A stretch of DNA of 34,113 nucleotides from Hyphochytrium catenoides (GCA_900088475.1 FLMG01002041.1:1-34113), one strand, 5' to 3'; positions 8,285 through 34,113 are shown, counted from the first letter of the stretch. The notes: a model not told the origin generated them from the sequence alone. A program made the numbers and translations.

Positions 8285-8405
8285 CAGCAGAGAGAGACAG
8301 AGAGGCAGTGAGACGAAGAAAGAGTAAGGCGATTGGGGAAGAGAGAGAGAGATGGCAAGCACGAAGAGTTTAGACAGAGAGAGAACGAGAGAGGGAGGAA
8401 GTGAA

Positions 8406-8437
<32 letters not shown>

Positions 8438-8575
8438 AGTGAAAGAGAGAGAGAGAGAGAGAGACAGAGAGACAGAGAAAGACAGAGGGAGAGAGGGAGA
8501 GAGAGAAAGAGACAGAGAGAGAGAGGGGGGGAGGTGAGTTAGAGGAGAGAGACAGAGAGCGAGAACAACAGAGGA
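8285..8575. repeat. GA-rich compound microsatellite (GA/GACA/GGGA)
   Basis: Long run of gagagaga, gacagaga and gggaga units. Confidence 0.9.
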
Positions 8576-8604
8576 GGAGCATAAGCAGAGGAAGGTGAGA
8601 TTGC

Positions 8605-8913
8605 ATGGTAGAGTGGGGTTTTAGTTGGAGGTACTTGTACAAGTACAAGGAACAAGATCTCATCGTCAGCGAAAGAGGAACGAAGTAACGCTTGCACAAG
8701 AGCCACACCGTGTTCGCCAGTCCATCTTACTTTTACAAGCACATCATCCCCGTGCTGAAAGATCTAGGAAAGAAAGTGACAGTCGGATTGTAGAGGGATA
8801 TCTTGTCCATCGTAGCTGCCACCAGAAGCCTATAACTAGTCACAAAGGCTACACGAACAGAATGCGGAGAAAAGAACAACACGAGGCAAAGAAGCCACAG
8901 AAAAGAAGCTTGA
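8605..8913 (+). pseudogene. Probable decayed coding fragment, product unknown
   Basis: One frame reads MVEWGFSWRYLYKYKEQDLIVSERGTK*RLHKSHTVFASPSYFYKHIIPVLKDLGKKVTVGL*RDILSIVAATRSL*LVTKAT. Codons often end in C/G, but there are three in-frame stops (8686, 8791, 8833). Confidence 0.35.
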
Positions 8914-9464: not shown

Positions 9465-11743
9465 GACCTCGGAAGCTTATTATTTCTAGAAAAAGTGAGG
9501 GAGTCAGCTGTACAATAACCTTCTTTCACACAGCACAATAAAGTATAGGATTTGCTAGTGAACTCGGAGAACCTCAATGGTGCTCTGGTAGTTGTCCCTT
9601 TGTCATGGAGCTCTTCTAAACTGTTATGCGGCCCCCGCTCTCCTCTCTCTATGCCTATGCGCCGGAGAAGAGCGCCAGTATTGATTCTCCTTAGTCCCAA
9701 GAAGTTGCCTCTGCTTCCATAGGCTGACTGACACCTTGGACTTGATTTACCATGAATAAAGAATGACGATCGCATTGATACACCGCTTCCTAGATGATAC
9801 CTTCAAACAATAATGTCCAGCCTTCCTCAGCACTTCTACCTAGGTACGGATAGAAGGTTCCTAGTAGCCTCCAACAATGCCTTTCCCTCCCCACAATGTA
9901 AGCGAGAGACCGCTTGAGTAGAAGAGGCCGGCGAACATAGCGATCAGCGACATCGTTGCACCCTATTACGCATGATAAGGAAGCTATGGGCCGTTAACGC
10001 TATGCCAATACCATCGTTTACTTGCTTGCAACTCAAAAAAAAGAGGTGGTGGCGGTTAGTCGTGCCTGTAGGTTTGAAGAAAGGCCGCCAACCTAGTCGG
10101 ATGTAGACCTGCTACTAGACTGTGAAGCTAAGACAGCACTCCAGCTGGACCCACTTCCAACAGGCAGCCCGTGTCATCTACTGTTATGGCTGTTGGTTCT
10201 ATATGCAGGCATGATCCTAAGCAAGAACTCTCATGTTATTCTGAGCCGGAAACACCTGGATCCTCTACTTCTCAGTAGGTCCCATCCTTCAGCGTCACCA
10301 AACACAGCGTTACCTCGCGCAGCCGGACTTGCCAGAACTTGATGACCTGCTGTGTGACTCACAATGTGATACCGGGCAAAACTTCTCTTTCAAGCGCAGT
10401 GCTATAAAGCGCTGTGTAGATTACCCATATAGGAACCAAAGCACCATCAAGCAGTGCTTGGTACTTTCCAGCTGGGATCGAACGGTAGAGCTCCCGATAA
10501 GTTTATGAGGAAGCTGTAGCTGTTCCATCCAGCTCCAGTACGACGAGAGCGAGAGGTTTGGTGTTTGGCCGACCAAGGAGAGGGGAGAACTAACTGAGAG
10601 ACAGGAAGGGCTGATGAACAAACATATCAAAGAAAGCGTGAGTTTACAGATAACAGGAATAGATTCTTCCCCTGCCCACAGCTCCAGGGATAGCTTCTGC
10701 CTCGGCCTGCTGGCCCAAAGCTTTGCTTTTAAAAGCCTACAAGCTGCAGCACGTTACGGTGGTGACAATAGGAGCATCCATTTCTATCATTGGACGCTAT
10801 CACCATGTCTCAAGGCTTCTTATTATAATGGTCTCAACTGAATATTCAAATCATGCTGCCCTGTTGAGTGCTTGCTGCTGCGTGTCCATCTTCCTTCTTC
10901 GCATCTTCGGCCACCTGCTGCTGCTGCATCTTCATCAACTGCGCTCATCAATCATCACATCAAGCCTCTTCACTGTGTCATCGATCTCCAAAATTCCCTC
11001 TATTAATTTAGCATAGAAGCCCTTTTGGCTATGTGCGGTTTGTCATCAGCCTTTAAACTCTTTCATAGGGTCGAATCTTCGGAATTTTATACGGAGTAGA
11101 TGGGAAATACTTTTGGCGGTGCCCCCTAGATGGCCTAGGGCTCGTCAACTCCCCCCCTACCACCACTCAGAGTCAGCTTGTCCCAGAAGTGAGTGAGTAA
11201 CCCCGGCGCTACAGCCAGGGGTGCCTTCCCAGGCCCACCCCATGTCCCTGAGTTATTGTTATTGTGCAGAGGTCCAGTTTCGCTTCCTTTTTTGCCACAC
11301 TGCTATTTTAGAAAGGCTAAACAGCTCAAGTGCCTCTCATCAATGACATAGAAAGCTTCAGAATGCAATAACGCGAGGTCGCTTTTGGTTCCTCTGGGTG
11401 GCTTGTTCAGAGTATAGAAGCACTGAGCCTACAAGACTAGTCCGCATCGCTGACAAGCCAACCTGCGTTGACTTGAGTTAGTCCAGAATTGGTCTGCTAT
11501 AGGGTCCCAGGACATCGTAGCGGGCGGCTGTCCGAGTTGCCGTTTGTTCCAGGTGCTTGCCAAGACTTCCCGCCTGTGACGCTGGGCCTCTCTCATATCG
11601 CCTCCCAGGTTGTATGCCATATTGGAGATTATGTCGAGCAAGAAATATCAAGGTACGACTGAAAAGCCTGTAGGCATAACGCTTGCGCACGATTCCTTCG
11701 GCAGCCTATCATTTACATTCGTGCCTCCACCACTTTTCGATAG

Positions 11744-12174
11744 ACTCAGATGACCGAAAATGTGCGGGCGACGTTGATCAAGTGAAACTGGGCCTGGGCA
11801 TTTCGGCATACTTTGACCCAGACTGCCCATCAGTTAAAGATTGCAGAAATGGATCACCTGGAGTTGGAGGATGCAGATGGTGTAAGACACCAAATAACAC
11901 GAACTCTGCCAGCTATCCTGATTGCCCGCTGGAGCCGGTCGTAGACGAGCTCTTGGGCCAGCTTGTAGCGACAGGCTTCTTCTTGGTTCTCTTCAGCTTC
12001 TTCAGCTTGCTCTGGGTGTGCCGGAAGAAGGAGAGCGCGAAACCTCTCAAGAAGGCCACCCGAATGCTCAACCGGAGAATCCCCAACCCTATAGACGCTG
12101 GACACGAAATCAAGCTACCGCCTGGGCCGATATATCCCGAGCTTGCTCAGATTGTTGACGACAAGGATGAATAG
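11744..12174 (+). CDS. Cys-rich single-pass membrane protein, paralog A (last exon; 5' exons unresolved, probably ~11490-11652)
   Basis: AG acceptor at 11743; 6-Cys ectodomain (CAGDV..GLGISAYFDPDC..C..GGCRWCK..YPDCP), hydrophobic helix (LVATGFFLVLFSFFSLLWVC), basic stop-transfer segment and tail DAGHEIKLPPGPIYPELA. Aligns end-to-end with paralog B. Confidence 0.85.
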
Positions 12175-14637
12175 ACACGCTGGATGGCTTTTCGCTTCCC
12201 AATGTATTTTTAGACCGAATTCTGAGGCTTTTTGCGCTAAGGGCAACTGTCCTGAGGTCAGTGAAGCTTGATGGTGGTCGTGACCTAAGGAGAACCAGCA
12301 ATGCCGACCTGGCAAGGGGCAGGTGACAGTTATGATATAAAGGAGTCTGGCTCCTGTTTGATACGACACTTGGTTACTGGCTATTCCCCAGCCATCTAGG
12401 GCCCTTAATTAGTGAGACTCTGCTTTGCTCAAACCTGAATATATTATAGTTAGGCAATGTAGAAACCGCCTAGCATACTAACTTTAAAGCAAACTCTATC
12501 ACGCCTATGTGTGACTCACCTACTGTCCGTAAGGCCTCTGAGATGTGACCGGCTACAGCAAGTCTAATACGGTTATTGCACTTCAGTACATTGTGCTCAG
12601 GGACAATCGCCAGGACACCGCAAAGATGTCCCTATTCAGCAGCAAGACCGCCTGAGATGAAGAGTACTCTAACTCCCCTCAGCCTTGCGCAGACCCGCAC
12701 TCCGCTTATGCGATGCTCGTTCCTGTCTTTCAGTGTGCTGAGGAACGCAGGCAATGCGAACGACCGTAACGGCTTTCCTGGTATGGCCACCAGAGTGACC
12801 TCAGAGAGCGCCAAGATTGTATGCAGCCTCTTACTCTCAAATTCCAACAAAGTGCGCTCGAGGGGGACCAGCGAGCAATAGCAAGTGGCAAGCACTCGGC
12901 CCCAGCACAAAGCTATGCTTGGGTGCGTCCCGGTACGGCACATCTGCTTGAGCGAGGGGTTCACCAATCTATCATTCATCCTCTTTTATCGGTCTCATCA
13001 TAGTCATCATCACGGATGGTAGGTGACGCCACATCATTCACAAAGTTTGACATTTCGCCTAAGGTAACGACCCACACCGCTGAGCACTGATCAGACGCAA
13101 TTCGATACAGCTGTTCGTACACAATAGGGCCGCGATGGATACGTACGTCTGTAGTCACTACTTTTTACCGCCAACAGTCTGTATGATGCAGAAGCTTAGT
13201 GGAGCACAAGAGGTACGTGGAAGGGCAATAGGCTTGGGAGCCCATCCATCCAAATCTTACCTTTGAAGAGCTGCATCTATCGTCCTACCCCCTGATGGCT
13301 TTTATGACAAAGGCTCTCAATGAGGGTTCTTTGCCCCCTCCTTAACACTCTTCCATTTTCATGCCTTCCTGCCATTCAAGCTCGGGAGACGGCTTCCCTA
13401 CGCCGAAATGTGGCTGCCTCCATTAATTTCGCACTATCTAACCTTTTCCTAACCGACAGAAAGCATCTCACATGGCTCTGTGCTCTTTGTCGCCAATGGT
13501 GAGCTGACTATGGACTGCGCTAGTGTGCTTGTGGTCTGTAAATGGACACTGGCAAGCCATGTCTTTTGTGGGCACAGTAGCTCTTCTGCTCTCTAAACTG
13601 TTGTCAGTTTCCATCAGCCTCGTAGACATCTTCTCGCCCTTCCAGAGACCTCTGTCTCTGATACCCCAGCAATCGAGCTATAGACACGATGGTTCTTCTA
13701 GAGCCTTTCCCGATAGCGCTTCATCACGCTTTGGCACTCATCCTATAAGAACTGATTTTTGGGGCAAGCTCTACTGCTTGTCAGCAGAGCCAAGTTCCAA
13801 GTATCCCATTTATGACGCCTTTCCAAGCAGACCCAGCCAGAGCTAAAGTATCGGAAGGCGATAGAGCTTTCAGTGTTCCTATCCCAGTACACCTTCCTTA
13901 CTGACAACCGAAATATATAACAGAGCCTTCTCTTGAGATTGTCGCTTTTCATAGGCCTTATATGGTATCTGTAGCCGGTTTCCCTCTTTATTACAGTTAC
14001 GCTACGTACCCTAGTACTTTACAATAAATACAGACCCGTACCCAATCTCTTAGACACTCTGTCTAGCATGGAATGATCCTGAAAAGGGCCCATATGAGTT
14101 AGATTATTAGAGCTTTCACAAGGGCAAGCGGTACCTCTTGCTCACTCTGTCTCTTGTGGGAAACTTCTCCATTATGTACAATTGTACCCAGTGATGGGTG
14201 GGCCACTTGCTGTATAATTGGTGCTTGTACTCTCTGTCCTACCCGCCGCCCCGCCTCTTTGGCCGCTTGCCGCTGCGGCAGCCTTGGAACGCACAGCGCT
14301 GCAGACAGTCAATTCTGAAGCTTATTGGCTTTTGTGGATTGCCTGTGGTCCAAGATCCTGGCGAAGCGGATGGCGCTGTCCAAGTAGAGGATAATGTATG
14401 GTTGCTCAAGGTTACCACTAAGGAATTGAAGTATTCTGAAGCAATTCGAGGACATTTGAAAGTACCTGCTGGAGCGAGGAGCCAACTTCTCTTCCTTTAT
14501 TCTAAGAAAAGAAGAGATAGCTGCGGCTAATACCGTCGTCAGTAACCAAAATGAGGGACTTTGCGAGTAAGTGCTGCTATCAGGCTCTGGATTCTTTTCT
14601 GAGAACTCAAGCTCTTCTACATCTTATCTCCTGGCAG

Positions 14638-15092
14638 TTCCTAAGGATGGACTCTGTGCTGGTATGGTCAGCGCGGCTGATATTGCCCTAGGACCTGGGG
14701 TCTCGGGCTTTTTTGAAGAACGATGTGATGTCGAGGAGTGCTTCGACACGTTTTCAGAGGGAAACACTGGATGCAGATACTGCAAGACAGGAGATGCTCC
14801 TTCTTCTGTCAAATACGTTCCTTGCCCCACCGGCAGACCCAGTGAGCTGATTGCCCAACTGGCAACTACCATGCTTATTCTTGGGGCCATCATCGTTGTC
14901 GCTGCAAGCTGGTTTATGCAGAAAGGGAAGACTGGACGGATGAAGAAAGCGAGTCATTATCTTCGTAGAAGCTTGGAACCGAACCGCATGGATGGCGGAC
15001 ATGAAATCAGACTGCCGCCTGGCCCGATTTATCCCGCATTGGCCGCGTATACACAGCCAAGAGTTGAAGATGAGAGCCGAAAGTCAAAGTAG
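14638..15092 (+). CDS. Cys-rich single-pass membrane protein, paralog B (last exon; probable mini-exon 14543-14566; other 5' exons unresolved)
   Basis: Phase-1 AG acceptor at 14637, equivalent to paralog A. Contains CAGMVS..GVSGFFEERC..C..TGCRYCK..YVPCP, TM helix LATTMLILGAIIVVAASWFM and tail DGGHEIRLPPGPIYPALA. Confidence 0.85.
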
Positions 15093-20105: not shown

Positions 20106-23100
20106 CTAGTAAACGCCCCAGAAGTCATTCGTCTCATGCGCGGGTGCATCCCAAACGAAGCTATTGCTGGCGTGCTTCACCTCGCCTACGCCAGGCGGAC
20201 ATCCTGTGTGCAAAGAAAGAGGATCTTCACTGCCATCTCCTAGCTTATTATAAAAAAGCGCAGCCGTCAGACGCCTGCTTGGAACGGCAGCGCCGTCTAG
20301 GCAGTAAGGCAAGGTGTTCTGTTATGGACAGCACGTTATTAACCTCGACTAAGCCCCATAAAGAGCACACAACAAGAGCCTTACCTCAAGCTCGGAGATG
20401 TTCGCAGAGTAAGGACGCGGAGTATTAATCTGCGCCTTCGGAAAGACCGTTTCTCCCCCGATGCGGACATCACTCAGATAGAGGAAGATAGTGGCAAACC
20501 GGTTGGGCAGAATTAGAGGCACATAGGCAGGGATGCTGCAAGGCAAGAAGGTTGTTAAGCAGGAGACCATTGGTCAAAGGCACCAAATAGCTTGTAGAGA
20601 GTCGAAACTTTCAAGAGTCACCGCTAAAGAAGTAAGACATGACTAAGGGCTAAGTGATACAATCAAAAGACGGAAGCATAGAGGATTGGAGCATTCCGGG
20701 GAAGTAGTGCCATAGTAGGAGGTGTTTAGGGGAGAGAAGAACCAGCTTTAGATCCACTAGACACAGAGGTGATTATCAGGGTCTTCACACCTATACTGAA
20801 AGGCAGGTCCGCCCTCTCTTGCCAGAGTTGTCGTTAAGATCTTGAAGATGCGGAAGTCTTTGATCAAAAGTTTGCTCAGGCCTTTGGGGCCCTCACCGAT
20901 GGCCACGGAGAAATTGGACCGAAGTTGCTCCGATATCCCTTCAGCTTCCCATAGATCAAGATAGAACATCATCCTCTCCCCTATGGCGGTCACGAAAACC
21001 CTATCGTATCGTGGATGCAAAGGGCCATCCGGCTGACAGAAGGGGATGCGAAGGACGAGCAGTAGTGAGTAAGAAGAGATGACCGAGGGAAGGGAAGAAG
21101 AAAGTGGAAGCGCATACGAGGAAGGGGTTAGCCACTTAGGTGGAAATGACCTTCAGTGTGGGGCGGCAGTCGTTGCCCAAGCTGGCCACCTGGTTTCGAG
21201 CCCAACGGATCCAGCGGGTCAACTGGGAGATGGGGTGGGCACGCTTCCCATCATAGGGTTTGGGGCTGGAAAGTATGCGTCAGCATTCGACAGATGGCTC
21301 TCCCCCTTACTCTACGAAGCAGCCTATGACTTCTGCTCTACCATCCTCCTGCTTATTGGATGCCCTCTGTACTCTATCTCTCTATGCTCTATATGCCGGC
21401 ACCTGTATGCAGGAACAAGTTGGCTGTCTGCGGAGACTCTCCATACTTCTTCCAGATATTCATTGACCCATGGAAAGGCTTCTACTAAGGTGCGTACAAT
21501 GTTCCTTTCTCTATTCTCAAGTTTCTCTTTAAGCTGCGAGATATCCCCGTTAGAGGTGACACTTAAAAGCTTCCTTGCTTTTGTGATTATGATGCCTCTT
21601 ACCCAGACCGCCCAGGTTTCTGGCAGTAATTTGGGATGGGCTGCGGTAAAGCGTGACAGGAGCGCCCATTGAAAGCCCTCGAGATCCAGAGGCTGGGGAT
21701 ATAGCTCCTCTCCTGCAGCCCAGCGAACGGGGTGAGCTGGTTGACTTGAAAGTGGCAGACAAGTGCTAGGGCGTCTGAGAGCTTAGAGAAGAATGACACA
21801 GCCTGATGAAGGCTTAGAACGATCGCAGGATGATGTAGCAAGACGAGTAACGAGGAATGCGTGGTCCTGGGTAAGTTATATATAGCAGCGGAGTTGATGT
21901 CCCAGGAGATGTTGCCCCTTCAAATGTGGTCATCCTTACCCTCTTGGACCACCTTGGCTAGGCGGCCTCGATAGGTCAGCACTAAACTTTGAGCCCACTG
22001 TGCCCAGTCAAGGTATCTTCTCCAGTCTGAGCTGAACGCTATCTGCCGGTCCGGGATGATGTCCGGCTTCTCAAAGTAGTCTGTATGCTTGGTATAGTAC
22101 TGACCAGACAAATAGCGGACGTACTGCAGCCGTTCAGCATAGCCTGTTTGCAACGAAGGCAAAGGAGCACTAACTCTTTAGGATCACGATAAGGAGCTGG
22201 GTAGAAGGACAACCTCTTTACCTGGGTTTGGCAGCCTTAACAGATGGGTGCTTCGGAACTGAAAGTCTCGCGTGAGGTTCGATGGCGGAAGGAAAGCCGT
22301 GTGACTGGTGCGATACTTTGCCACCTTCATTTTATTCTCTCCTGGCTCCACCACGACTGATTGCGCAAGGTGAGGGGCCCCTGACAAAGCAACAAACCTT
22401 AGCCTTCTTCCAGCTTTCTGCCTCCAGCAGCAGGAGCAGCGGGGTTGAACTTACCTTCCGCTATAATGGCTTCTGCCTCCCGGTCCGTAAAGAATCCATC
22501 AATTTGGAACACCTTTGGGGCCAGGGATACGGTCCGCATCACTACTCCGTCCACTTCTACGACATAACCAGGCCTTATACCCGGCCAAACCCAGTTCTGC
22601 CCGTCGAGAAGTAGGTAGATAATGTTCTTCGAAGCGGCGATGTCTTCAGCCGACTTGATGGGCTCACCGTACAGAGAGTAAAGCCGGAAGCCTAATGACA
22701 GGTATCTGCGGTCAATCAACGCGGTGGCTCCGAAGAGCTCTCCTAGTTCGTAGAGACAGTCTTTATGGAGGACAGGATCCCAGAAGATCAAAGCCCCGAT
22801 GTTTTCCCCGTTCTTCAAGACAAGAGCCCGATTCTTGGAGAGCAGTTCAGCGTACGGTCGGTCAATAACCTCGTTCACGTCCACTCCAGCTCCTGAGATG
22901 AGAGTCCCCAAAGACAGCAGAGCAAGTCAGTGATGGTTCGTGAAGCGATGCCTCTAAAATGAGTACTTACCTATGAGGACAGGGGCTGATGGACATCTCC
23001 TGCTGCGTGTAGTGAGCTGAGTAGAGGGACTGGCCGTCCAGTAGTGCTGGCCATGCTGATCCCAATGATTGCGAGCGTCCTGTGAATAGTGACCAACTTT

Positions 23101-23409
23101 GGAGGAGATTGGCGACTTCTCCCTTGGCTCCGTGATGGAGTCATCCGTAGGAGATTCAGAGGGAAGCAACTGATTCGTCTCATAAGCGTCTGCTCCATCG
23201 GATAGGAGCTCCAAGGTGCTGGAGGACGAGCTAAGCTGGTGGGCATCATGGTGCCCAGAGGGCCACACAAGGAGCGTTGTTGGCACCTTGCCCCAGGCGG
23301 ATAGGAGAGCAACGAAGGCTGGTAACGCAACCCCAAGCCATAGCTGGGCCCTCTGGCCACTCTTCTTGCCACTAGTCTTCTTTGGTGATGGAGCTTCTTT
23401 CCGCTTCAT
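20106..23409 (-). CDS. P4H: Prolyl 4-hydroxylase (2OG-Fe(II) dioxygenase), type II membrane-anchored, ~10 exons, with a large internal insertion
   Basis: N-terminal basic segment plus TM helix (LWLGVALPAFVALLSAW), then LLDGQNWVWPGIRPG, TVSLAPKVFQIDGFFTDREAEAII, YRTSHTAFL, ERLQYVRYLSGQYYTKHTDYF (HxD at 22079-22087), NRFATIFLYLSDVRIGGETVFP, AALFYN, SLHTGCP (distal His) and KHASNSFVW (2OG-binding Lys). All catalytic residues of plant/algal-type P4H are present. Confidence 0.93.
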
Positions 23410-23967
23410 GTTCCCCTTCGCCTTGTTGCCCGCCTTCTAATGCTTGCAACGCTGTGTCCTCTAAAGGTTTCTCCGTCACCAGCAAGGTCCTCCTTCGTGC
23501 CTACTGCCCTGTTCTGGTCCTGCGTCCTCTTTTGATGACTCAACGCCGCTCCTATGAAGACCTAGAGCGGAAGAATTGACCATGCGCGCTGCTGACAACG
23601 AGCCAAAGCCGTGGAAAGGAAGGAAGGTTTTCAGGATATATCACTTTCCCCTCTCTGGTTCAGGCATCAGCGGGGGAAGGAGCAGGAAGAGTGATGATGG
23701 ACTAGGAACAACAGGACGTGGAGGCGGAGGAAGTTAAGCCGTAGAGCCGAGGCAGCAGAATCTTTCCTCAGCGAGACAGTACAAGGGCTCCTAGCCTGAC
23801 GTTCGATAGGCCACTGGACCGAGGGAGAAGGAAGAGAAGAATTCACCTGTCAGCCGGGATGACGATCGAACGAGATAGTAGTTCCATGAGAGGAAGACCG
23901 AAGGATAAAGAATAAGAATGAGATAGAGGAGAATGAACCAAGGTAAGCTAGAACTACCTGTGTGATG

Positions 23968-24098
23968 ACGAAAGAGAAAGGTCAAGGAGAAAGAGAGAGA
24001 GAGAGAAAGAGAGGGAGAGAGAAAGAGAAAAAGAAAGAGAGAGAGAAACGAAGAGAGAGAAATAGAGAGAGAAGAGGTGGGAGAGAATTGGAGAGATG
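23968..24098. repeat. GA/GAAA purine-rich microsatellite
   Basis: gagagagagagaaagagagggagagagaaagagaaaaagaaagagagaga... Confidence 0.85.
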
Positions 24099-26009
24099 CT
24101 GGCTAGAGAGCTCGATCCATCAGTCAGGCGACCTTTCACACTCTCTTCAGAAACTATGTGCGCCATTTACTTCTAAACCTTAGCCGCTTCACCCAAACAG
24201 TAAGCATAATCTGCGCCGTCTGCCCCTGAGGATATTCCGTGAGACTCGGCTGATGATCTATCTTGGTGTTCAACTGCGTGATGATCGCCTGATCGCTGTC
24301 GCTGCCCATCATCTCCTCCTCATGTCTTCTCTCCGCTTCCCACTCTCTCTCCTGTTGGTTGCCTGACTGGTAGCTTGGCCCGGGCGCCTGTCCCTCAGCT
24401 TCTGCTGGCATGTGGCTGCATCATCCGCGCTTTCAACAGCAGGTTACGAAGCATAGCAAGCAACAGTGAAGGATGATCTCTGTTGATTGGACTGAGCTCT
24501 CGTGGTGTCGAGGAATGATCTTAGCTTGAATATTGAACGTTTCTATAGGGGCAACCACCTGCTTACTGGCTTAGAAAGGACTTCTCGGACGCTGTGGCTG
24601 CACTAGCGGTTTGTTGAGATAAGGCGATAGCCGGTATCTCCTCCTTCGACTTCATAAGACTGGAAGAAGAGCAACTTCCTCTCATGGAGCCCCAACAATA
24701 ACACAGCGCTACGCTGCACGAAGAGCGCTACTGCTGCTGCTGTTGGTGATGGGAGTTTGAGTGTTTGGCTTCTTCTTGGACAGCGTGCACACCGAAATCG
24801 AAGCTCTTCCATTCCCAGAAGGAAGAGTCGCTGGACCTAGCTCCTGAGCAAGGAAGACCTCAAAAGGACTGCGTAGGTTATCCTTTACGAACGAGTCTTC
24901 TTAGCCATGAGGATGATTTTAATAGCAAATCAAAGCCATTTGCTGTTCTTCGTCCTCCACGCTTATAGATCTTTCTTACTCCTTCGACGCTGGGTGAGTC
25001 AACATGCGCGTGAACCTTCCTGTCTTCTCTGCATGCTGCTGAAGACGTCTGCCACATGTGTCAGACGATGAGCCTTTATTGATCCGCTAGGGTCTCCTGT
25101 CGAAGGTGATACACTCTTACGATCCGTGTTAACATCGTCTTATCTGTCCAACGACACCTAAGGGTTGGTAGGGGAGCAAAGTGCTTGACTCATTGAGGTT
25201 GATGTCTGATAGAAGAGACAGGTAATCTTCTCTCCCCTGCTCTACTCTTCGCGACCCTCTATCAGAGCGAAAGCCACTTGCTCTACATATGAAGGGAGAA
25301 CCTAGCCCTGAGACCATCAGAACGAGACTGGCAAGTGGCTGCGAATGAGCAAAAGTGCATCTACGTTTTAAGAAGAGCCGAAGGCTTGATGATTGACGGT
25401 TGGCAAAACAATGGTATTAGCGAGTACAATGCTAAAGGAGGAGCCACCTCCTCCCTTCATCGTAGTCCGAACGCTTACACGGGAGTCTCCGGGCTCTCTA
25501 ACAGAGCCGCAGTCCACAAAGCGGTTGATAGCCGTGAAAGAGCTTCATGAGGAGAGATTCCTTAGCGATGCACCTGCATGGCCAGGTACTTTTCTCTGCC
25601 TGCCAAGCTGTCTCTGTCATACTAACGTATTAATGGCTCCGACAGAAACAGAGCTGGTAGCGTGTAAGGTGCATATCTTCATCCGTGTCGTCAACACGAT
25701 CGGTGAATCTGTAGACCCATAGCCCCTGAGGACAAAGTCTGCGGCGCACTCCTCCAGTCAATCATCCGAATTCTTATGGCCTCGGCCTACAGATCCGTTC
25801 CGAGGGCTATAATTGCACCCAAGGCTGGACACCTACCTTACGCACTTTGTGGACTCTCCTATCATTGATCTTGATGACTCTCATGCCACTGGAAGTCCCG
25901 CACTACTTACGAAAGCCGTTGGTTCAAAAGTCACTATAACAACTTTCCCAGGTTAAGATTGCCTGCCGAACTCTAGTCCAGCTCTAATGAATACTGCCCA
26001 CTCCTTTTA

Positions 26010-26165
26010 TAGACTTTCTCTCCGTCTCATGCTCTCAGCGTCTCGCTCCTTTTGTCTCTCTTGCTATATGTTTCTGTCTACCTGTCGCTAGCTTTCTCCC
26101 TGTCTTTTTCTGCGTCTTCCTCACCTTCGTTCTTTCTTTCTACTCTCAGTCTCCTTTCCTGCCAA
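26010..26165. repeat. CT-rich low-complexity tract
   Basis: Pyrimidine-rich degenerate (CT/CTT/CTGT)n on the + strand. Confidence 0.55.
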
Positions 26166-26712
26166 GCTCCACCTCATGGAGGTCCTGCTATTCCATGTCC
26201 TTTCTGGCGTAGACTCCTTCGTAGTTAGAGGTAGCACTGAAAGCTTCTTCTCCTTTATCTCTCCTTAGGCAAAAGTGCCATCAGGGGCCTTTCCTAGAAG
26301 TCGGCATCATGATGCTTCCATTGTTGCTTCTTCGACCCGGCTTTCCTAGGTCCAGGTCTGGGTAAAGTAGGCCACCCTCCTCTAACGAGAGGCTTCTTGC
26401 CCTATCGGCCACAAACCAGATATATGCTGCCGTACCTACACTTCCTCCTCAAAACGTGAATGCCGGATGGACCAAGTTGTTGTCTTTAGGAGGATACTCA
26501 AAGAGGATGGTTCCACGCAGTCAAGGTTATTCCAATCAAAGAATCCCTCATCCGAAGAAGCTCAAGTGCGGAGGAATGAGACTAGATTATAATGTGATGG
26601 GGATTAGTAGACCTATGATAATAGACATGAAGGACGACACGATATGCAGAAACTGAAGATTAATGCCTCGCTTCTAGCCCTCACTCCCTAGAACTTAGCC
26701 ATGCAGTTTGGC

Positions 26713-29700
26713 TCAGAGATCCTTCCAGACTAAGACGGCAGCGTAGACAAGCCGATAAGTCTCTCCAAAGAACAGGCAGGGCTGACCGTCCTTGCATTGC
26801 TTGACATTCACAGTCTTGTCAATCTTAAAATAGCTGTCTTTTGTCAGATCATTGTCGTTGGACATGACGATGTCCGCATCAGTGGTCTTAGAAGCACCAT
26901 GTAGGCAGATGTCCAACCTCGTGTCAGTGAAGGTGCCCTTAGCGGAGCCTTGGAAGTCCAGGGCTTTAGAAGTGAAGGAGGTCGTCAGATCGTACTTCAT
27001 TTCAGCCAGTAAGCCATTGAACTGAGCCGACATTGTCCCCTTGAACTGACACAGGTTCTCCACTGCGTCGAGTTTGACGAAGCCCGCCCCGGGCTTGAGG
27101 TCTGGAGATGTGTACTTGCTGCTACAGAGCTTCGCAAACTTACGGAGACTCTCAATCTGCTCTGGAGCTGCGTTGTAATAGTCCTTCTTGGCCACGTAGA
27201 CAGAGATCTCAACCAAGCGAGGGATGGCCTGATCCCCTGCAGGGCCTGGTGGACCTCGTGCACCAACGTCGCCCTTAGGACCAGCAGGTCCTGCTGGTCC
27301 GGTGTTACCAGTAGCTCCTTTAGGTCCTTCGGGGCCTGGAGCACCGTCCTTTCCAGGCGCGCCTGGAGCCCCTTTCTCTCCCTTCGGTCCGTCTGCACCA
27401 TCCTTACCAGGGGCGCCCGCCGGCCCAGGAGGACCGGTGGGTCCAGCGTATCCGCGTAATCCTGCAGGACCAGGGGGTCCAGCGGGCCCGGTGGCACCTG
27501 GTAAGCCAGTAGGTCCTGCGTATCCACGTTCACCTTGAGGTCCAGGGGCACCAGGGGCACCTGCAGGGCCAGTAGCACCTATAGGGCCGACGGGACCAGG
27601 CGGACCAGTTGGTCCAGCAGGTCCGGTAACTCCTTGGTAGCCTGGCGGCCCTGCAGGTCCTTTCTCTCCATCCTTCCCATCCCGACCATCTTTGCCGTCC
27701 TTGCCATTCTTACCCGCAGGACCAACCTCTCCCTTGGGCCCAGCAGGTCCTGGAGCTCCGTCCTTGCCATCCTTGCCAGGAGTTCCTACTGGACCTTGTG
27801 GTCCGGGAGCTCCCTTCTCTCCGTCCTTGCCATTGTAGCCGCGATCACCCTTCTCACCCTTTGCGCCTGGAGCTCCAACTGGTCCCGCAGGACCTGCCGG
27901 CCCTGTGGGTCCTTGATAGCCTCTGTCACCTTGTGGGCCCTTAGCTCCCACGGGTCCTGCCGCTCCTTGAGGTCCCTGAGGTCCAGGAGTTCCGTCTTTG
28001 CCTGGAGCACCAGCTGGGCCTGAAGTTCCAGTGGCACCTGTTGTGCCTGGCGCACCTGGAGAGCCAGCGTCACCTTTTGGCCCCTGTGGGCCAACAGGGC
28101 CGGGCAGTCCGACGTCTCCCTTAGGTCCTTGCGGTCCCGCCTCTCCTGTCGCTCCTGCGGCTCCTGGGTAACCTCTTTCTCCCTGAGGGCCCTGAGGCCC
28201 AGCCTCGCCTGTAGCACCAGATGGGCCTTGGTAGCCTCTCTCTCCCTGAGGACCTTGAGGCCCAGGAGCTCCTGTAATACCTGGTTCTCCCTGAGGTCCA
28301 GGAGACCCTTTCTCGCCCCGCGGCCCTTGAGCTCCTGGCGTGCCAGGAGCACCGTCCAAACCTGGGGTGCCATCGATACCCTTGGGACCTTCAGGACCCA
28401 TAGGGCCGGTGTATCCTCGCTCTCCCGGTGGCCCCTGAGGTCCTGGCTGGCCGTCAGCACCCGCTGGGCCCGTTGCCCCCACCGTACCAGGAGCGCCAGG
28501 GGATCCAGCATCGCCCTTCGGCCCTTGAGGTCCAGCTTCTCCTGTTGCGCCAGCTGGGCCTGGGTATCCCCTCTCTCCCTGAAGACCCTGAGGTCCAGTT
28601 GCCCCTGGGGTGCCATCCTCTCCCTTAGGACCAGGATATCCTCTCTCCCCTTGAGGACCTTGCGGCCCAGTCTCTCCAATGGCACCAGCGGCACCAGGAG
28701 CTCCAGGGATGCCAGCGTCGCCTTTCGGGCCTTGCGGTCCAGTCTCACCTGTAGCTCCATTAGTCCCTGGGAGGCCTGGGTATCCCCTCTCTCCTTGTAA
28801 GCCTTGAGGTCCAGCGGGTCCTGTGTCGCCCTTCTCGCCTTTTGGTCCCTGGGGCCCGGGAGCTCCTTCGTATCCTTTCTCTCCTTGAGGGCCCTGAGGT
28901 CCAGGAAGTCCGTCCTTCCCTGGAGCGCCGATCTGCCCGGGATATCCTCTTTCTCCCTGTGGTCCTTGAGGTCCGACATCGCCAGTAGCTCCAGCTGGGC
29001 CTGGGTTACCGGTATCACCCTTGGGGCCTTGAGCTCCAGTCTCTCCCGCTGGACCTTGTGGTCCAGGGTAACCCATCTCTCCTCTGCGGCCCTCTGGTCC
29101 GGGCTGACCGTCAAGACCTGCCGGCCCTGGTACGCCAGTGGCACCTGGTGCACCAGTGTATCCTTTCTCTCCCTGAGGACCTTGAGGTCCGGGAACGCCT
29201 GGTGTCCCATCGGCTCCCTTTTCGCCAGGATAACCTCTCTCACCCTGCGGTCCTTGTGGCCCAACTTCTCCAGTGGCTCCAGTAGCACCAGGCGCTCCTT
29301 GATATCCTCTCTCTCCCTGTGGCCCTTGGGGTCCGATTTCTCCAGTTGGACCTGGGGCACCGGGGTAGCCTCTCTCACCCTGTAAGCCCTGTGGCCCTGC
29401 GGCACCAGTGTCTCCCTTGTCTCCCTGAGGACCCTGTGCTCCTGGCAGCCCATCTTTTCCAGGCGCACCGTCCTGGCCTGGGTAGCCTCTGTCGCCATGT
29501 GGTCCTTGAGGGCCTTGCTCCCCAACAGGGCCTGCTGGTCCGGGGTTACCATTGTCTCCTTTGGGTCCTTGAGGTCCAGGTAAGCCTGGCTGTCCGATAT
29601 CTCCTTGGGCACCCTGTGGGCCTTGTGGGCCTGCCTGACCTGTCTCTCCTTTCGGCCCTTCAGGTCCTACTGGGCCTGGCGAACCATTCTCTCCATGGTA

Positions 29701-32700
29701 GCCTCTCTCACCCTTGGGCCCTTGTGGACCAGGCTGTCCGTCTTTTCCTGGAGTGCCATCCTGACCAGGATATCCTCTCTCTCCTTGTGGGCCTTGAGGC
29801 CCTGCCTCGCCAGTAGCACCCACAGCACCAGGATAGCCAGTCTCGCCCTTTGGTCCCTCTGGTCCGGGCACGCCAGGATATCCTCTTTCTCCTTGAGAGC
29901 CTGGAGACCCAGTCTCTCCTGCAGGTCCCGCGACTCCAGGTGATCCGGTATCGCCCTTAGGACCTTGAGGGCCTTCTGGACCACTATCTCCTTTCTCGCC
30001 CTGAGGACCTTGAAGTCCAGGTTGACCATTTGTGCCCGGTGCCCCGTCCTGGCCGCGATAGCCTCTTTCTCCTTGTGGGCCCTGATGTCCAATGTCACCC
30101 TTAGCTCCAGCTGATCCTGGATAGCCAGCTTCTCCCTGAGGACCTTGAGGTCCTGGAGCGCCAGGAGCACCAGTCTCCCCCTTGGGACCCTGCGCACCGT
30201 CCTGTCCGCTCGGCCCAGGTAAACCTTGGTATCCTCTCTCTCCCTGTGGCCCTTGGGGTCCTGCAGATCCACTGTCTCCCTTCTCACCCTTTGGGCCTTG
30301 AGCCCCAGGCTGCCCATCCTTGCCATTGTATCCGTCCTTCCCTGGAACTCCAGCCTCACCCTGAGGTCCTGGATAACCTCTGTCTCCCTGTGGACCCTGG
30401 GCTCCTGGCTGACCATCAACTCCCGCGGGACCTGGAGCTCCAGTTGCGCCGGTTGCCCCTGGATAGCCTTGTTCTCCCTTGGGGCCTTGAAGCCCCGGGG
30501 TGCCTGGGTATCCCGTCTCTCCTTGAGGTCCTTGAGGTCCAGCGGGACCCACAGCACCAGTGTCTCCCTTTGGTCCTTCAGGTCCGATGGCACCAGGATA
30601 ACCCCTGTCTCCCGGAGGGCCTTGCGGCCCAGGATGACCATCCTGGCCTGAGACGCCTTGAGGACCTACTGCTCCGTCTTGTCCAGGTGCGCCTGGGTAG
30701 CCTCTTTCTCCCTGTGGACCCTGTGGACCGATCTCTCCCGTAGCTCCAGTGGCACCTGGAGCTCCAGGACTTCCTGTGTCACCTTTAGGGCCCTGAGGTC
30801 CAGTCTCGCCCGTGGCACCGATACCTCCATCAGCTCCAGGATATCCTTTCTCTCCCTGTGGTCCTTGGGGTCCTACGGGTCCCTGAGGTCCAACCTTCCC
30901 TTCCGGACCTTCTGGACCTAATGCCCCTGGATAGCCTCTTTCTCCCTGCGGGCCTTGAGGGCCAGGATGGCCGTCGACACCAGCAGGACCGGGATCTCCT
31001 CTCTCTCCGTGTGGCCCTTGAGGTCCTGGTTTGCCGGCAGCACCATCCTTTCCATCTTTGCCTGGACTTCCATCTCCTCCTTTCGGACCGGAAGAACCTC
31101 TCTCTCCTTGTGGCCCCTGAGGACCAGTCTCGCCCTTAGCTCCAGTTGGACCAGGGGCGCCAGGGTATCCGTTTTCTCCCTTAGGTCCTTCTGGTCCTGG
31201 AACACCTGGATATCCCTTCTCCCCCTGAGGGCCCTGAGGACCTGGGTGACCATCAACTCCAGCAGGGCCTTGCGGTCCAGGTTCTCCTGGTGCTCCATTG
31301 TATCCTCTCTCGCCTTGAGGACCTTGAGGTCCAACTTCTCCGGGTGCTCCAACTGCACCGGTGGCACCGGGAGTTCCTGTCTCGCCTTTCGGTCCTTCAG
31401 GTCCTGCTGGGCCAGGATAGCCCCTCTCTCCCTGAGGGCCCTGCGCTCCTTGCTGGCCATCATTCCCATCGAGACCATCCTTGCCGGGGGAACCTTGTGA
31501 TCCTTGTGGTCCTTCAGGACCGGGGGCACCAGTGTATCCTTTTTCACCTTGCGGACCTTGGGAACCAGGTTGACCATCGGCACCAGCAGGGCCAGGATAT
31601 CCTCTTTCTCCTTGAGGGCCCTGAGGACCAACAGCACCAACCTCACCAGTATCTCCCTTGGAACCTTGAGGTCCTGCCTCTCCATTCGTGCCAGCTGGAC
31701 CTGGGTAGCCTCTCTCTCCCTGCAGGCCTTGAGGCCCAGCTGGGCCGATGTCTCCCTTATCTCCCTGAGACCCTGGAGCGCCGGGAAGCCCATCCTTCCC
31801 AGGAGTACCATCTTGGCCGGGGTAGCCTCTCTCTCCCTGTCGTCCTTGAGGTCCCACGGGCCCAGGCGGACCCGTTGCTCCTTCAGGTCCTTGAGGACCT
31901 GCTTGCCCTGGGTAGCCTCTTTCTCCTTGCTCTCCTTTGGCGCCATCCTTCCCGTCATGACCATCTTTCCCATCCTTTCCGTCTTTGCCTTTATCTCCCT
32001 TCGGACCCTGAGGACCTGTCTCACCCCTAGCTCCAGGACCGCCGGGAGTACCGGGGGCGCCCTTCTCACCCTGTGGTCCTTGAGGTCCAGGCTGTCCGTC
32101 TTTACCAGAAGTTCCATCCTGTCCGGGATAGCCCCTCTCTCCCTGAGGGCCTTGAGGTCCAGCTAGACCAGGCAGTCCTTGATCTCCTTGCGGTCCTTGA
32201 GCTCCAGGGAGGCCAGGGCTTCCAGTGTCTCCCTTTGGCCCCTGAAGGCCTTGCTCACCATTGACTCCGGGTGCTCCAGGTGCTCCGGTGTCTCCTTTAG
32301 GGCCAGGATAGCCTTGCTCGCCCTGAGGGCCTTGAGGCCCGACAGCTCCAGTCGCTCCAGGAGTACCAATAGCGCCAGCTGGGCCAATCTCTCCCTTCGG
32401 CCCCTCTGGGCCTGGTAATCCAGGGTATCCTTTCTCTCCCTGAGGGCCCTGAGGTCCTTCTCGACCTTCCTTCCCATCAGCCCCAGCAGGCCCTGGAGGA
32501 CCTTCAGGTCCGGGGGCGCCTGGGTACCCAGTTTCGCCCTTGGGTCCATCTGATCCAGGAGCTCCTGGGTACCCTCGCTCACCGTGAGGCCCTTGAGGGC
32601 CAGGTTGTCCATTAACTCCCTGAATGCCTTGGTCACCTTTCTCACCCTGAGGCCCTGGTGGCCCCGGCTGTCCAATAGCACCTGGCTGTCCATCGGCACC

Positions 32701-34113
32701 TGGAGCGCCAGCATCTCCCTTTTCGCCGTGGTAACCTCTCTCTCCTTGTGGCCCTTGAGGACCAGTCTCACCAGTAGCTCCAGGGGCGCCGGGAGCACCA
32801 GGATATCCAGTTTCTCCCTTTGGCCCTTGGGGACCTACAGCGCCCGGAGACCCAGGCTCCCCTTGAGGTCCTTGGGGTCCAGCGGTGCCAGGATATCCTC
32901 TCTCCCCGTGNNNNNNNNNNNNNNNNNNNNNNNNNNNNNNNNNNNNNNNNNNNNNNNNNNNNNGGCTGGCCATCCTTACCAGGTGTCCCGTCTTGACCGG
33001 GGTAGCCTCTCTCGCCCTGGACCCCCTGTTGCCCTTGGGGCCCGACAGGACCCATCTCTCCCTGAGGTCCCTGAGATCCTGCAAGACCAGGATATCCTCT
33101 CTCACCATCCTTGCCTGCTGGGCCTTGTTCGCCTTGTGGTCCTTGAGGCCCAGGAACGCCAGGGTAACCAGTATCTCCCTTGGCTCCCTGAAGCCCCGGG
33201 TGGCCATCAGCCCCAGGAGCCCCCGGCGCTCCAGTGTCTCCTTTGGGTCCAATGTCGCCTTTATCGCCCTGAGGTCCTTGGGGCCCTATTTCACCAGTAG
33301 CTCCAGCAGCTCCAGGGGCGCCTGGGTATCCTCTCTCACCTTGAGGGCCAGGAGGTCCTGACTGTCCATCCTTCCCAGGAGCACCGTCCTGACCAGGGTA
33401 GCCCTTCTCTCCTTGTGGGCCTTGCTCACCTGCCTCACCCTTTGGTCCCGCTGAACCAGGGTAGCCTCTCTCGCCCTGAGAACCTTGGGGCCCTATTTCG
33501 CCGGCAGGACCAGGCTGACCTGTCTCTCCCTTTGGCCCTGGGTTACCCGGACTTCCGTTCTCGCCCTTGGGTCCTTCGGGTCCAGCTGGTCCTGGTTGTC
33601 CAACTGCACCGTCATGGCCGTTGGGTCCAGGTGGACCCTGCTCACCCTTATCACCTTTGTATCCCTTCGGTCCTTGAAGTCCAGTGGAACCTGGAGGGCC
33701 TTGCAACCCTGGGACTCCTGGAACTCCGTCTAGTCCTGCCGGACCCTGAGGACCTTGAGGACCGGACGGTCCCTGCTCTCCAGGGGATCCCGGATAGCCG
33801 TGCGGCCCTGCAGGTCCCTCAGGCCCCGGCAGACCAGGGCTCCCATCTTGTCCCTTAGGACCCTGAGGGCCCATCTCGCCCGTTGGTCCAGTGGGACCAG
33901 GGTAACCCGTATCGCCCTTTGGACCTTGAGGTCCTGGTTGTCCGTCCTTTCCGGCGGCTCCTTCTTGTCCTGGAGTTCCTGGGGCACCAGGATATCCCGT
34001 CTCTCCCTTAGGACCTTGAGGTCCGATACCTCCGGGTGCGCCGGCTGGCCCTGGATATCCTGCCTCTCCTTTAGGCCCTGAAGGGCCGGTCTCCCCTGCA
34101 GGTCCTTGTGGCC
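26713..34113 (-). CDS. Giant collagen-like protein (5'-truncated by the window end): >=~760 Gly-X-Y triplets plus ~172-aa C-terminal globular domain
   Basis: Continuous Gly-X-Y reading from the window end (..[20 protein letters not shown]..) to GPPGPAGDQ at ~27229, then a non-collagenous domain ending [14 protein letters not shown] at 26713. The two listed ORFs (32768..33874 and 26713..33252) are one gene whose frame changes only inside the N gap. Confidence 0.95.
32911..32963. other. Assembly gap (53 N) inside the collagen gene
   Basis: Run of n characters, with collagen triplets in register on both sides. Confidence 1.

What the first reader, a model, noticed from the sequence alone, without database searches (positions are those of the whole stretch)
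20106..34113. Candidate protist collagen system: prolyl 4-hydroxylase beside a giant Y-position-Pro collagen
Seen: a secretory-pathway P4H with intact HxD...H...K residues lies 3.3 kb downstream of, and co-oriented with, a huge Gly-X-Y gene, with no recognisable intact gene between them. The collagen carries abundant Y-position Pro ([24 protein letters not shown]). Established: Y-position Pro in X-Pro-Gly is the P4H substrate that stabilises animal triple helices, whereas bacterial and phage collagen-like proteins lack Hyp and favour X-position Pro. Inference: this may be a linked enzyme-substrate pair building a hydroxyproline collagen (stalk, lorica, adhesive thread, extrusome or cyst coat) in a flagellated non-animal eukaryote, independently of the metazoan system. 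Adjacency alone could be chance.
Basis: partly seen in the sequence, partly recalled or inferred. Interest (0 to 1): 0.85.

Follow-up and report, generated by a model that had tools for sequence, protein, structure and literature searches.

The report
Giant protist collagen beside a prolyl hydroxylase
An oomycete-like protist has a very long, proline-rich collagen gene lying 3.3 kb from a gene for the enzyme type that hardens animal collagen, but nothing here shows that the enzyme acts on this collagen.

Summary
On the minus strand, 26713-34113 encodes an intron-free collagen with 756 perfect Gly-X-Y triplets, split by the N gap and running off the window. It ends in a 173-aa, 5-Cys domain with no detectable relative. 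X-Pro is 33% and Y-Pro 24%, which is the animal range and not the bacterial one. However, Gly-Pro-Pro is about 4.5-fold depleted and Gly-Tyr-Pro about 3-fold enriched.

After 3,303 bp with no recognisable gene lies an 8-exon, 651-aa P4H-family gene on the same strand (23409-20106, GT-AG introns). It has an N-terminal membrane anchor, HxD and the distal His. Its Lys sits at +11 rather than +10, and about 175 aa are inserted in the loop that covers the peptide in solved P4Hs.

As written, the gap breaks the frame, but its length is only estimated. Both sides are collagen on the same strand.

The enzyme-substrate link could not be tested. Neither protein had findable close relatives, so synteny could not be checked. 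Non-metazoan collagens that co-occur with P4H are already published (Linden & King 2021).

Other notes from this scan (unchecked) report another collagen and several other P4H-like genes elsewhere in this genome. The same collagen stretch was also noted from another window.

Verdict: real genes and a plausible pair. Function and the meaning of the linkage are unproven.

The parts
32964..34113 (-). Collagen gene, 5' visible part: 126 perfect Gly-X-Y triplets. It runs off the window end, so the N-terminus and any signal peptide are unseen.
   Evidence: Translation; triplet statistics.
32911..32963 (.). Assembly gap (53 N) inside the collagen helix. As written it shifts the frame by 1. Its true length is unknown.
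27235..32910 (-). Collagen triple-helix region: 630 perfect Gly-X-Y triplets with no stop and no intron. The GERGYPG motif recurs 23 times in total. There is a faint 288-nt (96-aa) periodicity at about 28808-30443.
   Evidence: No recent tandem repeats.
26716..27234 (-). C-terminal non-collagenous domain, 173 aa with 5 Cys, probably beta-rich. It is an orphan and a candidate trimerisation/nucleation domain (inference).
   Evidence: No hit in Pfam. None in the length-limited protein search. None among 1.84 billion representatives. AF2 pLDDT 38, unusable.
26713..26715 (-). Collagen stop codon.
23410..26712 (.). 3,303-bp intergenic region with no recognisable gene. It holds a CT/GA-type low-complexity tract at about 23950-24170.
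   Evidence: ORF list; Pfam blanks.
22971..23409 (-). P4H exon 1: start codon, basic tail, membrane anchor (aa 21-39), Ser/Pro-rich stalk.
22455..22892 (-). P4H exon 2: unknown domain of about 110 aa plus the start of the catalytic domain.
   Evidence: No Pfam or homologue hits. An Atlas lead points to oomycete P4H clusters.
22222..22380 (-). P4H exon 3.
21940..22143 (-). P4H exon 4: carries the HTD iron ligands (aa 365-367) and the start of the long insertion.
   Evidence: PF13640 positions 1-32, E=0.012.
21603..21712 (-). P4H exon 5 (provisional), part of the insertion.
   Evidence: In-frame GT-AG model; exon-like codon-position GC. No RNA or homologue support.
20791..21032 (-). P4H exon 6 (provisional), part of the insertion.
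   Evidence: Atlas search uninformative.
20385..20535 (-). P4H exon 7: the NRFATIFLYL...GGETVFP strands.
   Evidence: Matches B. anthracis P4H 3ITQ/5HV0 at E=5e-4, P4H-TM 6TP5 at 0.025, and human C-P4H alpha-2 7ZSC at 0.029.
20106..20318 (-). P4H exon 8: distal His (aa 618), Lys (aa 629, +11), stop codon.
   Evidence: Matches Chlamydomonas P4H 2JIG at E=0.0024.

Best explanation
This is a native gene pair in an oomycete-related, intron-rich stramenopile.

Shown:
- A giant intron-free collagen with at least 756 Gly-X-Y triplets. At the standard 0.286 nm rise per residue that would be a rod of about 650 nm.
- The collagen ends in an orphan, Cys-containing domain.
- 3.3 kb downstream on the same strand lies an 8-exon, type-II membrane-anchored member of the prolyl 4-hydroxylase family.

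Inferred mechanism:
- The collagen enters the secretory pathway.
- The anchored P4H hydroxylates its Y-position prolines, mainly in Ala-Pro-Gly and Tyr-Pro-Gly.
- Three chains are registered by the C-terminal domain and zip into a triple helix.
- The helix is stabilised jointly by Hyp, 33% X-Pro and Lys-Gly-Glu/Asp salt bridges.
- The 62 X-position tyrosines may serve for oxidative cross-linking of an extracellular fibre.
For: The collagen is real and very long (PF01391). Y-Pro is 24%, within the range of the animal collagens measured here (14-36%) and far from a bacterial giant collagen (4%).

The P4H family assignment rests on three colinear exons and on an in-frame, all-GT-AG model of 651 aa with an N-terminal anchor.

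Both genes lie on the same strand, with no gap and no recognisable gene between them. GC3 of the collagen tail is 0.66 and of the P4H exons 0.60, which points to the same genomic background.

The 175-aa insertion sits between HxD and the next conserved strand, where B. anthracis P4H has 11 residues. From my own knowledge of the Chlamydomonas P4H structure, that loop closes over the peptide substrate, so the insertion would fit a specialised substrate. This is inference.

If P4H genes are few among many thousands of genes, a chance immediate neighbour is a priori rare, roughly 1% or less per genome. The gene counts behind that estimate are assumed, not measured.
Against: There is no functional, expression or synteny evidence. 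No relatives of the collagen tail or of P4H exons were found.

Gly-Pro-Pro occurs 13 times against 59 expected; no shuffle out of 20,000 reached so low a value. It is the preferred substrate and main stabilising triplet in animals.

Hyp-independent stabilisers are abundant.

The Lys is at +11, and the Trp that follows it in Chlamydomonas P4H is His here, so activity is unproven.

Other notes from this scan report several other P4H-like genes in this genome (unchecked). Eukaryotic enzyme-substrate pairs are rarely clustered. The collagen N-terminus is off the window, so secretion is itself inferred.
Confidence: 0.42

Rival explanations
1. Both genes are real, but the adjacency is coincidental. 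The P4H serves other proline-rich secretory proteins, as plant and algal P4Hs do for hydroxyproline-rich glycoproteins. The collagen folds without Hyp, stabilised by X-Pro, Gln and Lys-Gly-Glu/Asp ion pairs as bacterial collagens are.
For: GPP is depleted 4.5-fold. There are 52 KGE/KGD motifs, X-Pro is 33% and Y-Gln about 20%. Several other P4H-like loci are noted in the genome (unchecked). An Atlas lead suggests that a P4H of similar length (680 aa) is conserved in oomycetes (lead only), while the collagen tail has no relative anywhere. Co-occurrence of P4H and collagen is common across eukaryotes without known linkage (bioRxiv 10.1101/2021.10.08.463732).
Against: The Y-Pro level (24%) is much higher than in the bacterial comparator (4%). 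The chance of an immediate P4H neighbour is low a priori. The two genes share a strand with nothing recognisable between them.
Confidence: 0.4
2. The P4H-like gene encodes an enzyme with a different specificity, or a catalytically impaired protein, so no Hyp-collagen link exists through it.
For: Lys is at +11 instead of +10 and the last strand is divergent. About 175 aa are inserted in the substrate-lid loop. Exons 5 and 6 are modelled without RNA or homologue support. Single exons do not reach Pfam's gathering score.
Against: HxD and the distal His are intact. The reading frame is open through 8 exons with canonical splice sites. Codon-position GC is exon-like, which argues against a pseudogene.
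Confidence: 0.12
3. The collagen is foreign or artefactual: animal contamination, a chimeric scaffold, or a recent insertion from a bacterium or giant virus.
For: It is intron-free in an intron-rich genome. The helix region has different composition (GC 0.60-0.65, GC3 0.37) from its surroundings. Its best database hits are animal collagens. An assembly gap lies inside it.
Against: The animal hits are compositional (35-46% identity, mostly type VII collagens with other domains). There is no COLF1, NC1 or any other known domain. GC3 of the tail matches the P4H exons. There is no gap between the collagen and the intron-bearing P4H. No viral or bacterial relative of the tail was found among 1.84 billion proteins. 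The bacterial collagen pattern differs. Repeat copies are only 60-72% identical, so the gene is old.
Confidence: 0.04

Closest known systems
Non-metazoan eukaryotic collagens surveyed by Linden & King 2021 (bioRxiv 10.1101/2021.10.08.463732), including stramenopile ones
   Same: A collagen-domain protein in a SAR-clade protist whose genome also encodes P4H-domain proteins. That paper already argues such collagens may be Hyp-stabilised.
   Different: SAR collagens there have a median repeat length of 85.5 aa and a median of 0% Pro. This one has more than 2,268 aa of helix and about 28% Pro at X/Y, near the metazoan median of 29.9%. Gene-level linkage to a P4H is not among the analyses in the sections I read.
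Metazoan fibrillar collagens with the C-P4H alpha2beta2 enzyme
   Same: A long uninterrupted triple helix, Y-Pro in the animal range, a C-terminal non-helical domain with cysteines, and an ER-type P4H-family enzyme with HxD...H.
   Different: No COLF1 propeptide. The helix is more than twice the roughly 338 triplets of fibrillar collagens. GPP is depleted and GYP enriched. The gene is intron-free. The P4H lacks the P4Ha_N/peptide-substrate-binding domain, is membrane-anchored, and carries a 175-aa insertion.
Plant and algal type-II membrane P4Hs (Chlamydomonas Cr-P4H-1, PDB 2JIG; Arabidopsis At-P4H-1)
   Same: An N-terminal signal anchor plus a P4H catalytic domain. The last exon's best solved match is Cr-P4H-1. 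At-P4H-1 is reported to hydroxylate collagen-like peptides, as cited in the Linden & King preprint.
   Different: Those enzymes are about 250-320 aa (my knowledge) and their known substrates are hydroxyproline-rich glycoproteins. This protein is 651 aa with an extra N-terminal domain, a lid insertion and Lys at +11.
Mimivirus collagen-like proteins with the L593 prolyl hydroxylase and L230 lysyl hydroxylase (PMC9546862)
   Same: A non-animal genome encoding both collagens and a P4H shown to hydroxylate collagen.
   Different: That system is viral, and judging by gene numbering the viral genes are not adjacent. Here a cellular, intron-bearing P4H lies next to the collagen, and no viral hallmark genes were seen.
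Bacterial collagen-like proteins (e.g. the 2,753-aa metagenomic protein P0097 on L001; Blastocystis 'bacterial-type' collagens, PMC5608401)
   Same: Intron-free, can be giant, GPQ-rich, GPP-poor, with many charged pairs.
   Different: The bacterial comparator has X-Pro 55% and Y-Pro 4%, against 33% and 24% here. The Blastocystis proteins have only 63 triplets.

Membership tests
Collagen triple-helix repeat proteins (Pfam PF01391) | Gly at every third residue over long uninterrupted runs | tested here: met
   630 + 126 triplets, none lacking Gly.
Collagen triple-helix repeat proteins (Pfam PF01391) | Profile match above the curated cut-off | tested here: met
   39.3 bits against 27.2 on the last 60 helix residues.
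Collagen triple-helix repeat proteins (Pfam PF01391) | Actual trimeric triple-helix formation and 4-hydroxyproline content | not testable with these tools
   Needs protein chemistry.
Metazoan fibrillar collagen | C-terminal COLF1 propeptide (PF01410) | tested here: not met
   Pfam finds only Collagen in the last 235 aa. The tail has no relatives.
Metazoan collagen IV | C-terminal NC1 domain (PF01413) | tested here: not met
Bacterial-type collagen-like proteins | Pro concentrated at X with little Y-Pro; stabilisation without Hyp | tested here: not met
   Y-Pro is 24% against 4% in the bacterial comparator P0097. The protein does share GPP scarcity and KGE/KGD abundance with them.
Prolyl 4-hydroxylase family (P4Hc; 2OG-Fe(II) oxygenase PF13640) | HxD...H iron-binding triad in the double-stranded beta-helix | tested here: met
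   HTD at aa 365-367 aligned to the start of PF13640. His618 aligned to the distal His region of Cr-P4H.
Prolyl 4-hydroxylase family (P4Hc; 2OG-Fe(II) oxygenase PF13640) | 2-oxoglutarate-binding Lys 10 residues after the distal His | tested here: inconclusive
   Lys is at +11. HMMER aligns the Cr-P4H Lys to Val and places the query Lys opposite a gap.
Prolyl 4-hydroxylase family (P4Hc; 2OG-Fe(II) oxygenase PF13640) | Significant sequence similarity to characterised P4Hs | tested here: met
   Exon 7 matches B. anthracis P4H at E=5e-4, and also P4H-TM and human alpha-2. Exon 8 matches Cr-P4H at E=2.4e-3. The matches are colinear and only P4Hs are hit. The whole spliced protein could not be submitted to any tool.
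Animal collagen P4H alpha subunit | N-terminal dimerisation and peptide-substrate-binding domain (PF08336 P4Ha_N) | tested here: not met
   No Pfam hit in exons 1-2.
Plant/algal membrane-anchored P4H | Type-II signal anchor followed directly by a compact catalytic domain | tested here: inconclusive
   The anchor is present (aa 21-39, mean Kyte-Doolittle 1.64). However, a stalk, an unknown 110-aa domain and a 175-aa insertion make the architecture different.

The most novel reading that the evidence does not exclude
An oomycete-related stramenopile has independently assembled a dedicated, physically linked collagen module. A specialised membrane P4H with an enlarged substrate lid would hydroxylate Y-prolines of a roughly 650-nm, tyrosine-studded triple helix. 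An orphan C-terminal domain would trimerise the chains. Together they would give a hydroxyproline collagen fibre (cyst coat, adhesive or stalk material) evolved outside animals and their relatives.
Probability: 0.3. Interest if true: 0.8.

Novelty: new variant of a known kind. Interest (0 to 1): 0.5.

Why it matters
Collagen with hydroxyproline was long treated as an animal hallmark. A 2021 survey showed collagen domains and P4H domains scattered across eukaryotes, but it could not say whether any non-animal P4H works on any non-animal collagen.

A locus where the two genes are neighbours gives one concrete enzyme and one concrete substrate to test. The collagen is animal-like in length and Y-proline content, yet it has its own end domain and its own triplet usage: Tyr-Pro rich and Pro-Pro poor. 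If the link holds, Hyp-stabilised collagen would have arisen or been retained far from animals, and the unusual P4H lid insertion would become a lead on substrate selection. If it fails, the locus is simply one more long protist collagen.

Tried and rejected
1. Homologues of the collagen C-terminal domain. The length-limited search gave 0 hits. Exhaustive phmmer over 1.84 billion representatives gave 0. Pfam found nothing. The Atlas gave nothing credible. The AF2 single-sequence model had pLDDT 38 and was not used for fold search.

2. Relatives of the helix. There were 3,712 hits, all compositional. The best were vertebrate collagen VII at 35-46% identity. The one collagen-only JGI hit (P0097) proved bacterial from its neighbours.

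3. P4H relatives for a synteny test. Exon 2 in the protein database gave 0 hits. Two metagenome scans, with exons 2 and 8, gave 0 confirmed loci. Full-length homologues (about 650 aa) were out of reach. The spliced protein has no reference, the length filter excludes them for single exons, and I did not type the sequence.

4. AF2 of P4H exon 2 gave pLDDT 45, unusable. The Atlas search on exon 6 was uninformative.

5. A strict-consensus splice search for the middle of the P4H found no chain. A model using one weaker donor (GTGTGA) and introns of 227, 570 and 255 nt closes the frame. An extension of exon 5 to 21447 was rejected because its GC3 is intron-like.

6. Recent repeat expansion is rejected. 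TRF finds no array and repeat copies are 60-72% identical.

7. Giant-virus or bacterial origin, and animal contamination, were considered and judged unlikely (see the rival explanations).
Full report
**What is in the sequence: the collagen**

The window is eukaryote-like. It has GC 44-54% up to 26.7 kb, few long ORFs, and then a GC 60-65% block with strong strand skew from 27 kb to the end.

That block is one minus-strand reading frame. Positions 26716-32910 translate without a stop into 2,065 aa, made of 630 consecutive Gly-X-Y triplets and a 173-aa non-collagen tail. The stop is at 26713-26715. Pfam's Collagen model passes its cut-off, 39.3 bits against 27.2.

**The assembly gap**

The 53 N lie at 32911-32963, inside the helix. 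Upstream of them, 32964-34111 translates in a different frame into 126 more perfect triplets and runs off the window. Two nucleotides are left over before the gap, and 2 + 53 is not a multiple of three, so the frame is broken as written.

The gap length is only an estimate. Both edges are the same strand with the same composition, and both carry the recurring GERGYPG motif within a few codons of the gap. One gene is the simplest reading. Continuity is not proven, and a larger hidden gap could in principle separate two tandem genes. The N-terminus is off the window, so a signal peptide cannot be checked.

**Composition of the helix**

- X-position Pro is 33% and Y-position Pro is 24% (180 triplets). 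Y-Gln is about 20% and Y-Lys 9-11%.
- Gly-Pro-Pro occurs only 13 times against 59 expected from the column frequencies. None of 20,000 shuffles reached so low a value.
- Gly-Tyr-Pro occurs 44 times against 15 expected, and 23 of those are preceded by Gly-Glu-Arg.
- The helix has no Cys, Phe or Trp.
- There are 52 Lys-Gly-Glu/Asp motifs. From general knowledge of collagen peptide studies, these stabilise triple helices without hydroxyproline.

Comparators measured the same way:
- A 2,753-aa collagen-like protein, shown to be bacterial by its suf-operon and ribosomal-protein neighbours, has X-Pro 55%, Y-Pro 4% and Y-Gln 42%.
- The animal collagens among the hits have Y-Pro 14-36%.

This helix is therefore animal-like in Y-Pro and in length. 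It resembles bacterial collagens in its GPQ richness and GPP scarcity.

**Age and origin of the collagen**

Tandem Repeats Finder sees no array in the gene. The repeat families are only 60-72% identical, with a faint 288-nt period around 28.8-30.4 kb. This is an old, diversified gene and not a recent expansion.

The helix uses A/T-ending Gly, Pro and Ala codons (GC3 0.37). The tail has GC3 0.66, close to the 0.60 of the neighbouring P4H exons. That argues the gene is at home in this genome.

**The C-terminal domain**

The 173-aa tail has 5 Cys. It has no Pfam match, no hit in the length-limited search, and no hit among 1.84 billion representatives. Its single-sequence AlphaFold model is unusable at pLDDT 38. 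A role in trimerisation is inference by analogy with other collagens.

**The P4H gene**

On the same strand, I built an 8-exon model from ATG 23409 to the stop at 20106-20108. All introns are GT-AG, with lengths 78, 74, 78, 227, 570, 255 and 66 nt. The frame closes at 651 aa.

Three exons independently match P4H family members, in the right order:
- Exon 4, carrying HTD, matches the start of PF13640 (E=0.012).
- Exon 7 matches *Bacillus anthracis* P4H (E=5e-4), human P4H-TM and human C-P4H alpha-2.
- Exon 8 matches *Chlamydomonas* P4H (E=2.4e-3).

The protein begins with a basic tail and a hydrophobic anchor at aa 21-39. That topology is type II, as in plant P4Hs and P4H-TM (my knowledge).

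Caveats:
- The Lys assumed to bind 2-oxoglutarate is 11, not 10, residues after the distal His, and the strand after it is divergent.
- About 175 residues lie between HxD and the next conserved strand, where *B. anthracis* P4H has 11.
- Exons 5 and 6, which supply much of that insertion, rest only on splice logic and exon-like codon-position GC.
- There is no P4Ha_N/substrate-binding domain of the animal alpha subunit.

**Between and around the genes**

The 3,303 bp between the genes hold only short ORFs without credible Pfam matches. The only assembly gap is inside the collagen. The intron-bearing P4H and the collagen tail are therefore physically joined in read sequence.

**What organism**

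This window alone says little. An Atlas feature search with P4H exon 2 pointed to oomycete clusters, including a 680-aa PF13640 family (a lead only). Several follow-up notes from other windows of the same genome describe an intron-rich stramenopile related to oomycetes (not checked by me). An animal origin is unlikely.

**Is it an enzyme-substrate pair?**

This could not be tested. No relative of the collagen tail or of P4H exons was retrievable, so synteny is unknown.

In favour:
- The two genes are immediate neighbours on one strand.
- There are many Y-prolines.
- The enzyme is secretory.
- The enlarged lid suggests a specialised substrate.

Against:
- GPP is depleted.
- Hyp-independent stabilisers are plentiful.
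- The Lys spacing is atypical.
- Other notes from this scan report several other P4H-like genes and at least one more collagen elsewhere in the genome (unchecked).

I put the functional link at roughly 40-45% and coincidence at about 40%.

**What is known**

Linden & King (bioRxiv 10.1101/2021.10.08.463732) already showed collagen domains in 19 of 31 SAR families. They found that 84% of collagen-encoding proteomes also encode P4H domains, and proposed Hyp stabilisation. SAR collagens there were short (median 85.5 aa) and proline-poor (median 0%), so this one is an outlier.

*Blastocystis* has short, bacterial-type collagens (PMC5608401). Brown algae are said to lack collagen (PMC8307928). Mimivirus has collagens and a P4H that hydroxylates collagen (PMC9546862).

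What is new here is the physical linkage, the orphan end domain, the Tyr-Pro-rich and Pro-Pro-poor triplet usage, and the odd P4H architecture. It is a new variant of a known kind, of moderate interest until function or conserved linkage is shown.

Noticed in passing
window 20791-22100 (-): The P4H model carries about 175 aa between the HxD motif and the next conserved strand, where B. anthracis P4H has 11. Two of the exons supplying it (21712-21603 and 21032-20791) are provisional.
   Followed up: partly
window 27235-34111 (-): Gly-Pro-Pro is depleted 4.5-fold (13 against 59 expected). Gly-Tyr-Pro is enriched 3-fold, mostly as GER-GYP. All 62 Tyr sit at X positions, and there is no Cys, Phe or Trp in the helix. 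This suggests a role for Tyr, such as cross-linking, but that is untested.
   Followed up: partly
window 28808-30443 (-): Faint 288-nt (96-aa, 32-triplet) periodicity among diverged repeat copies (60-70% identity), hinting at an ancient repeat unit.
   Followed up: no
window 11680-12171 (+) and 14571-15089 (+): Two paralogous ORFs (39% identity, E=2e-27). Each has a Cys-rich ectodomain motif (CRxCKT), one hydrophobic helix and a conserved tail (GHEI[KR]LPPGPIYP). Neither has a Pfam match.
   Followed up: partly
window 8201-8726 and 23950-24170: Long CT/GA-type low-complexity tracts that give Ser/Leu-rich pseudo-ORFs. The first produces the strong purine skew at 8-9 kb.
   Followed up: no
window 21079-21672 (+): A 197-aa ATG ORF on the opposite strand, inside the proposed 570-nt intron 5 of the P4H. 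It was not tested and may be chance.
   Followed up: no
L001 10001-24807: On a JGI metagenome contig (bacterial, next to a suf operon), a 2,753-aa collagen-like gene is followed by a 2,099-aa gene with no Pfam domain. This looks like a giant bacterial collagen locus.
   Followed up: no
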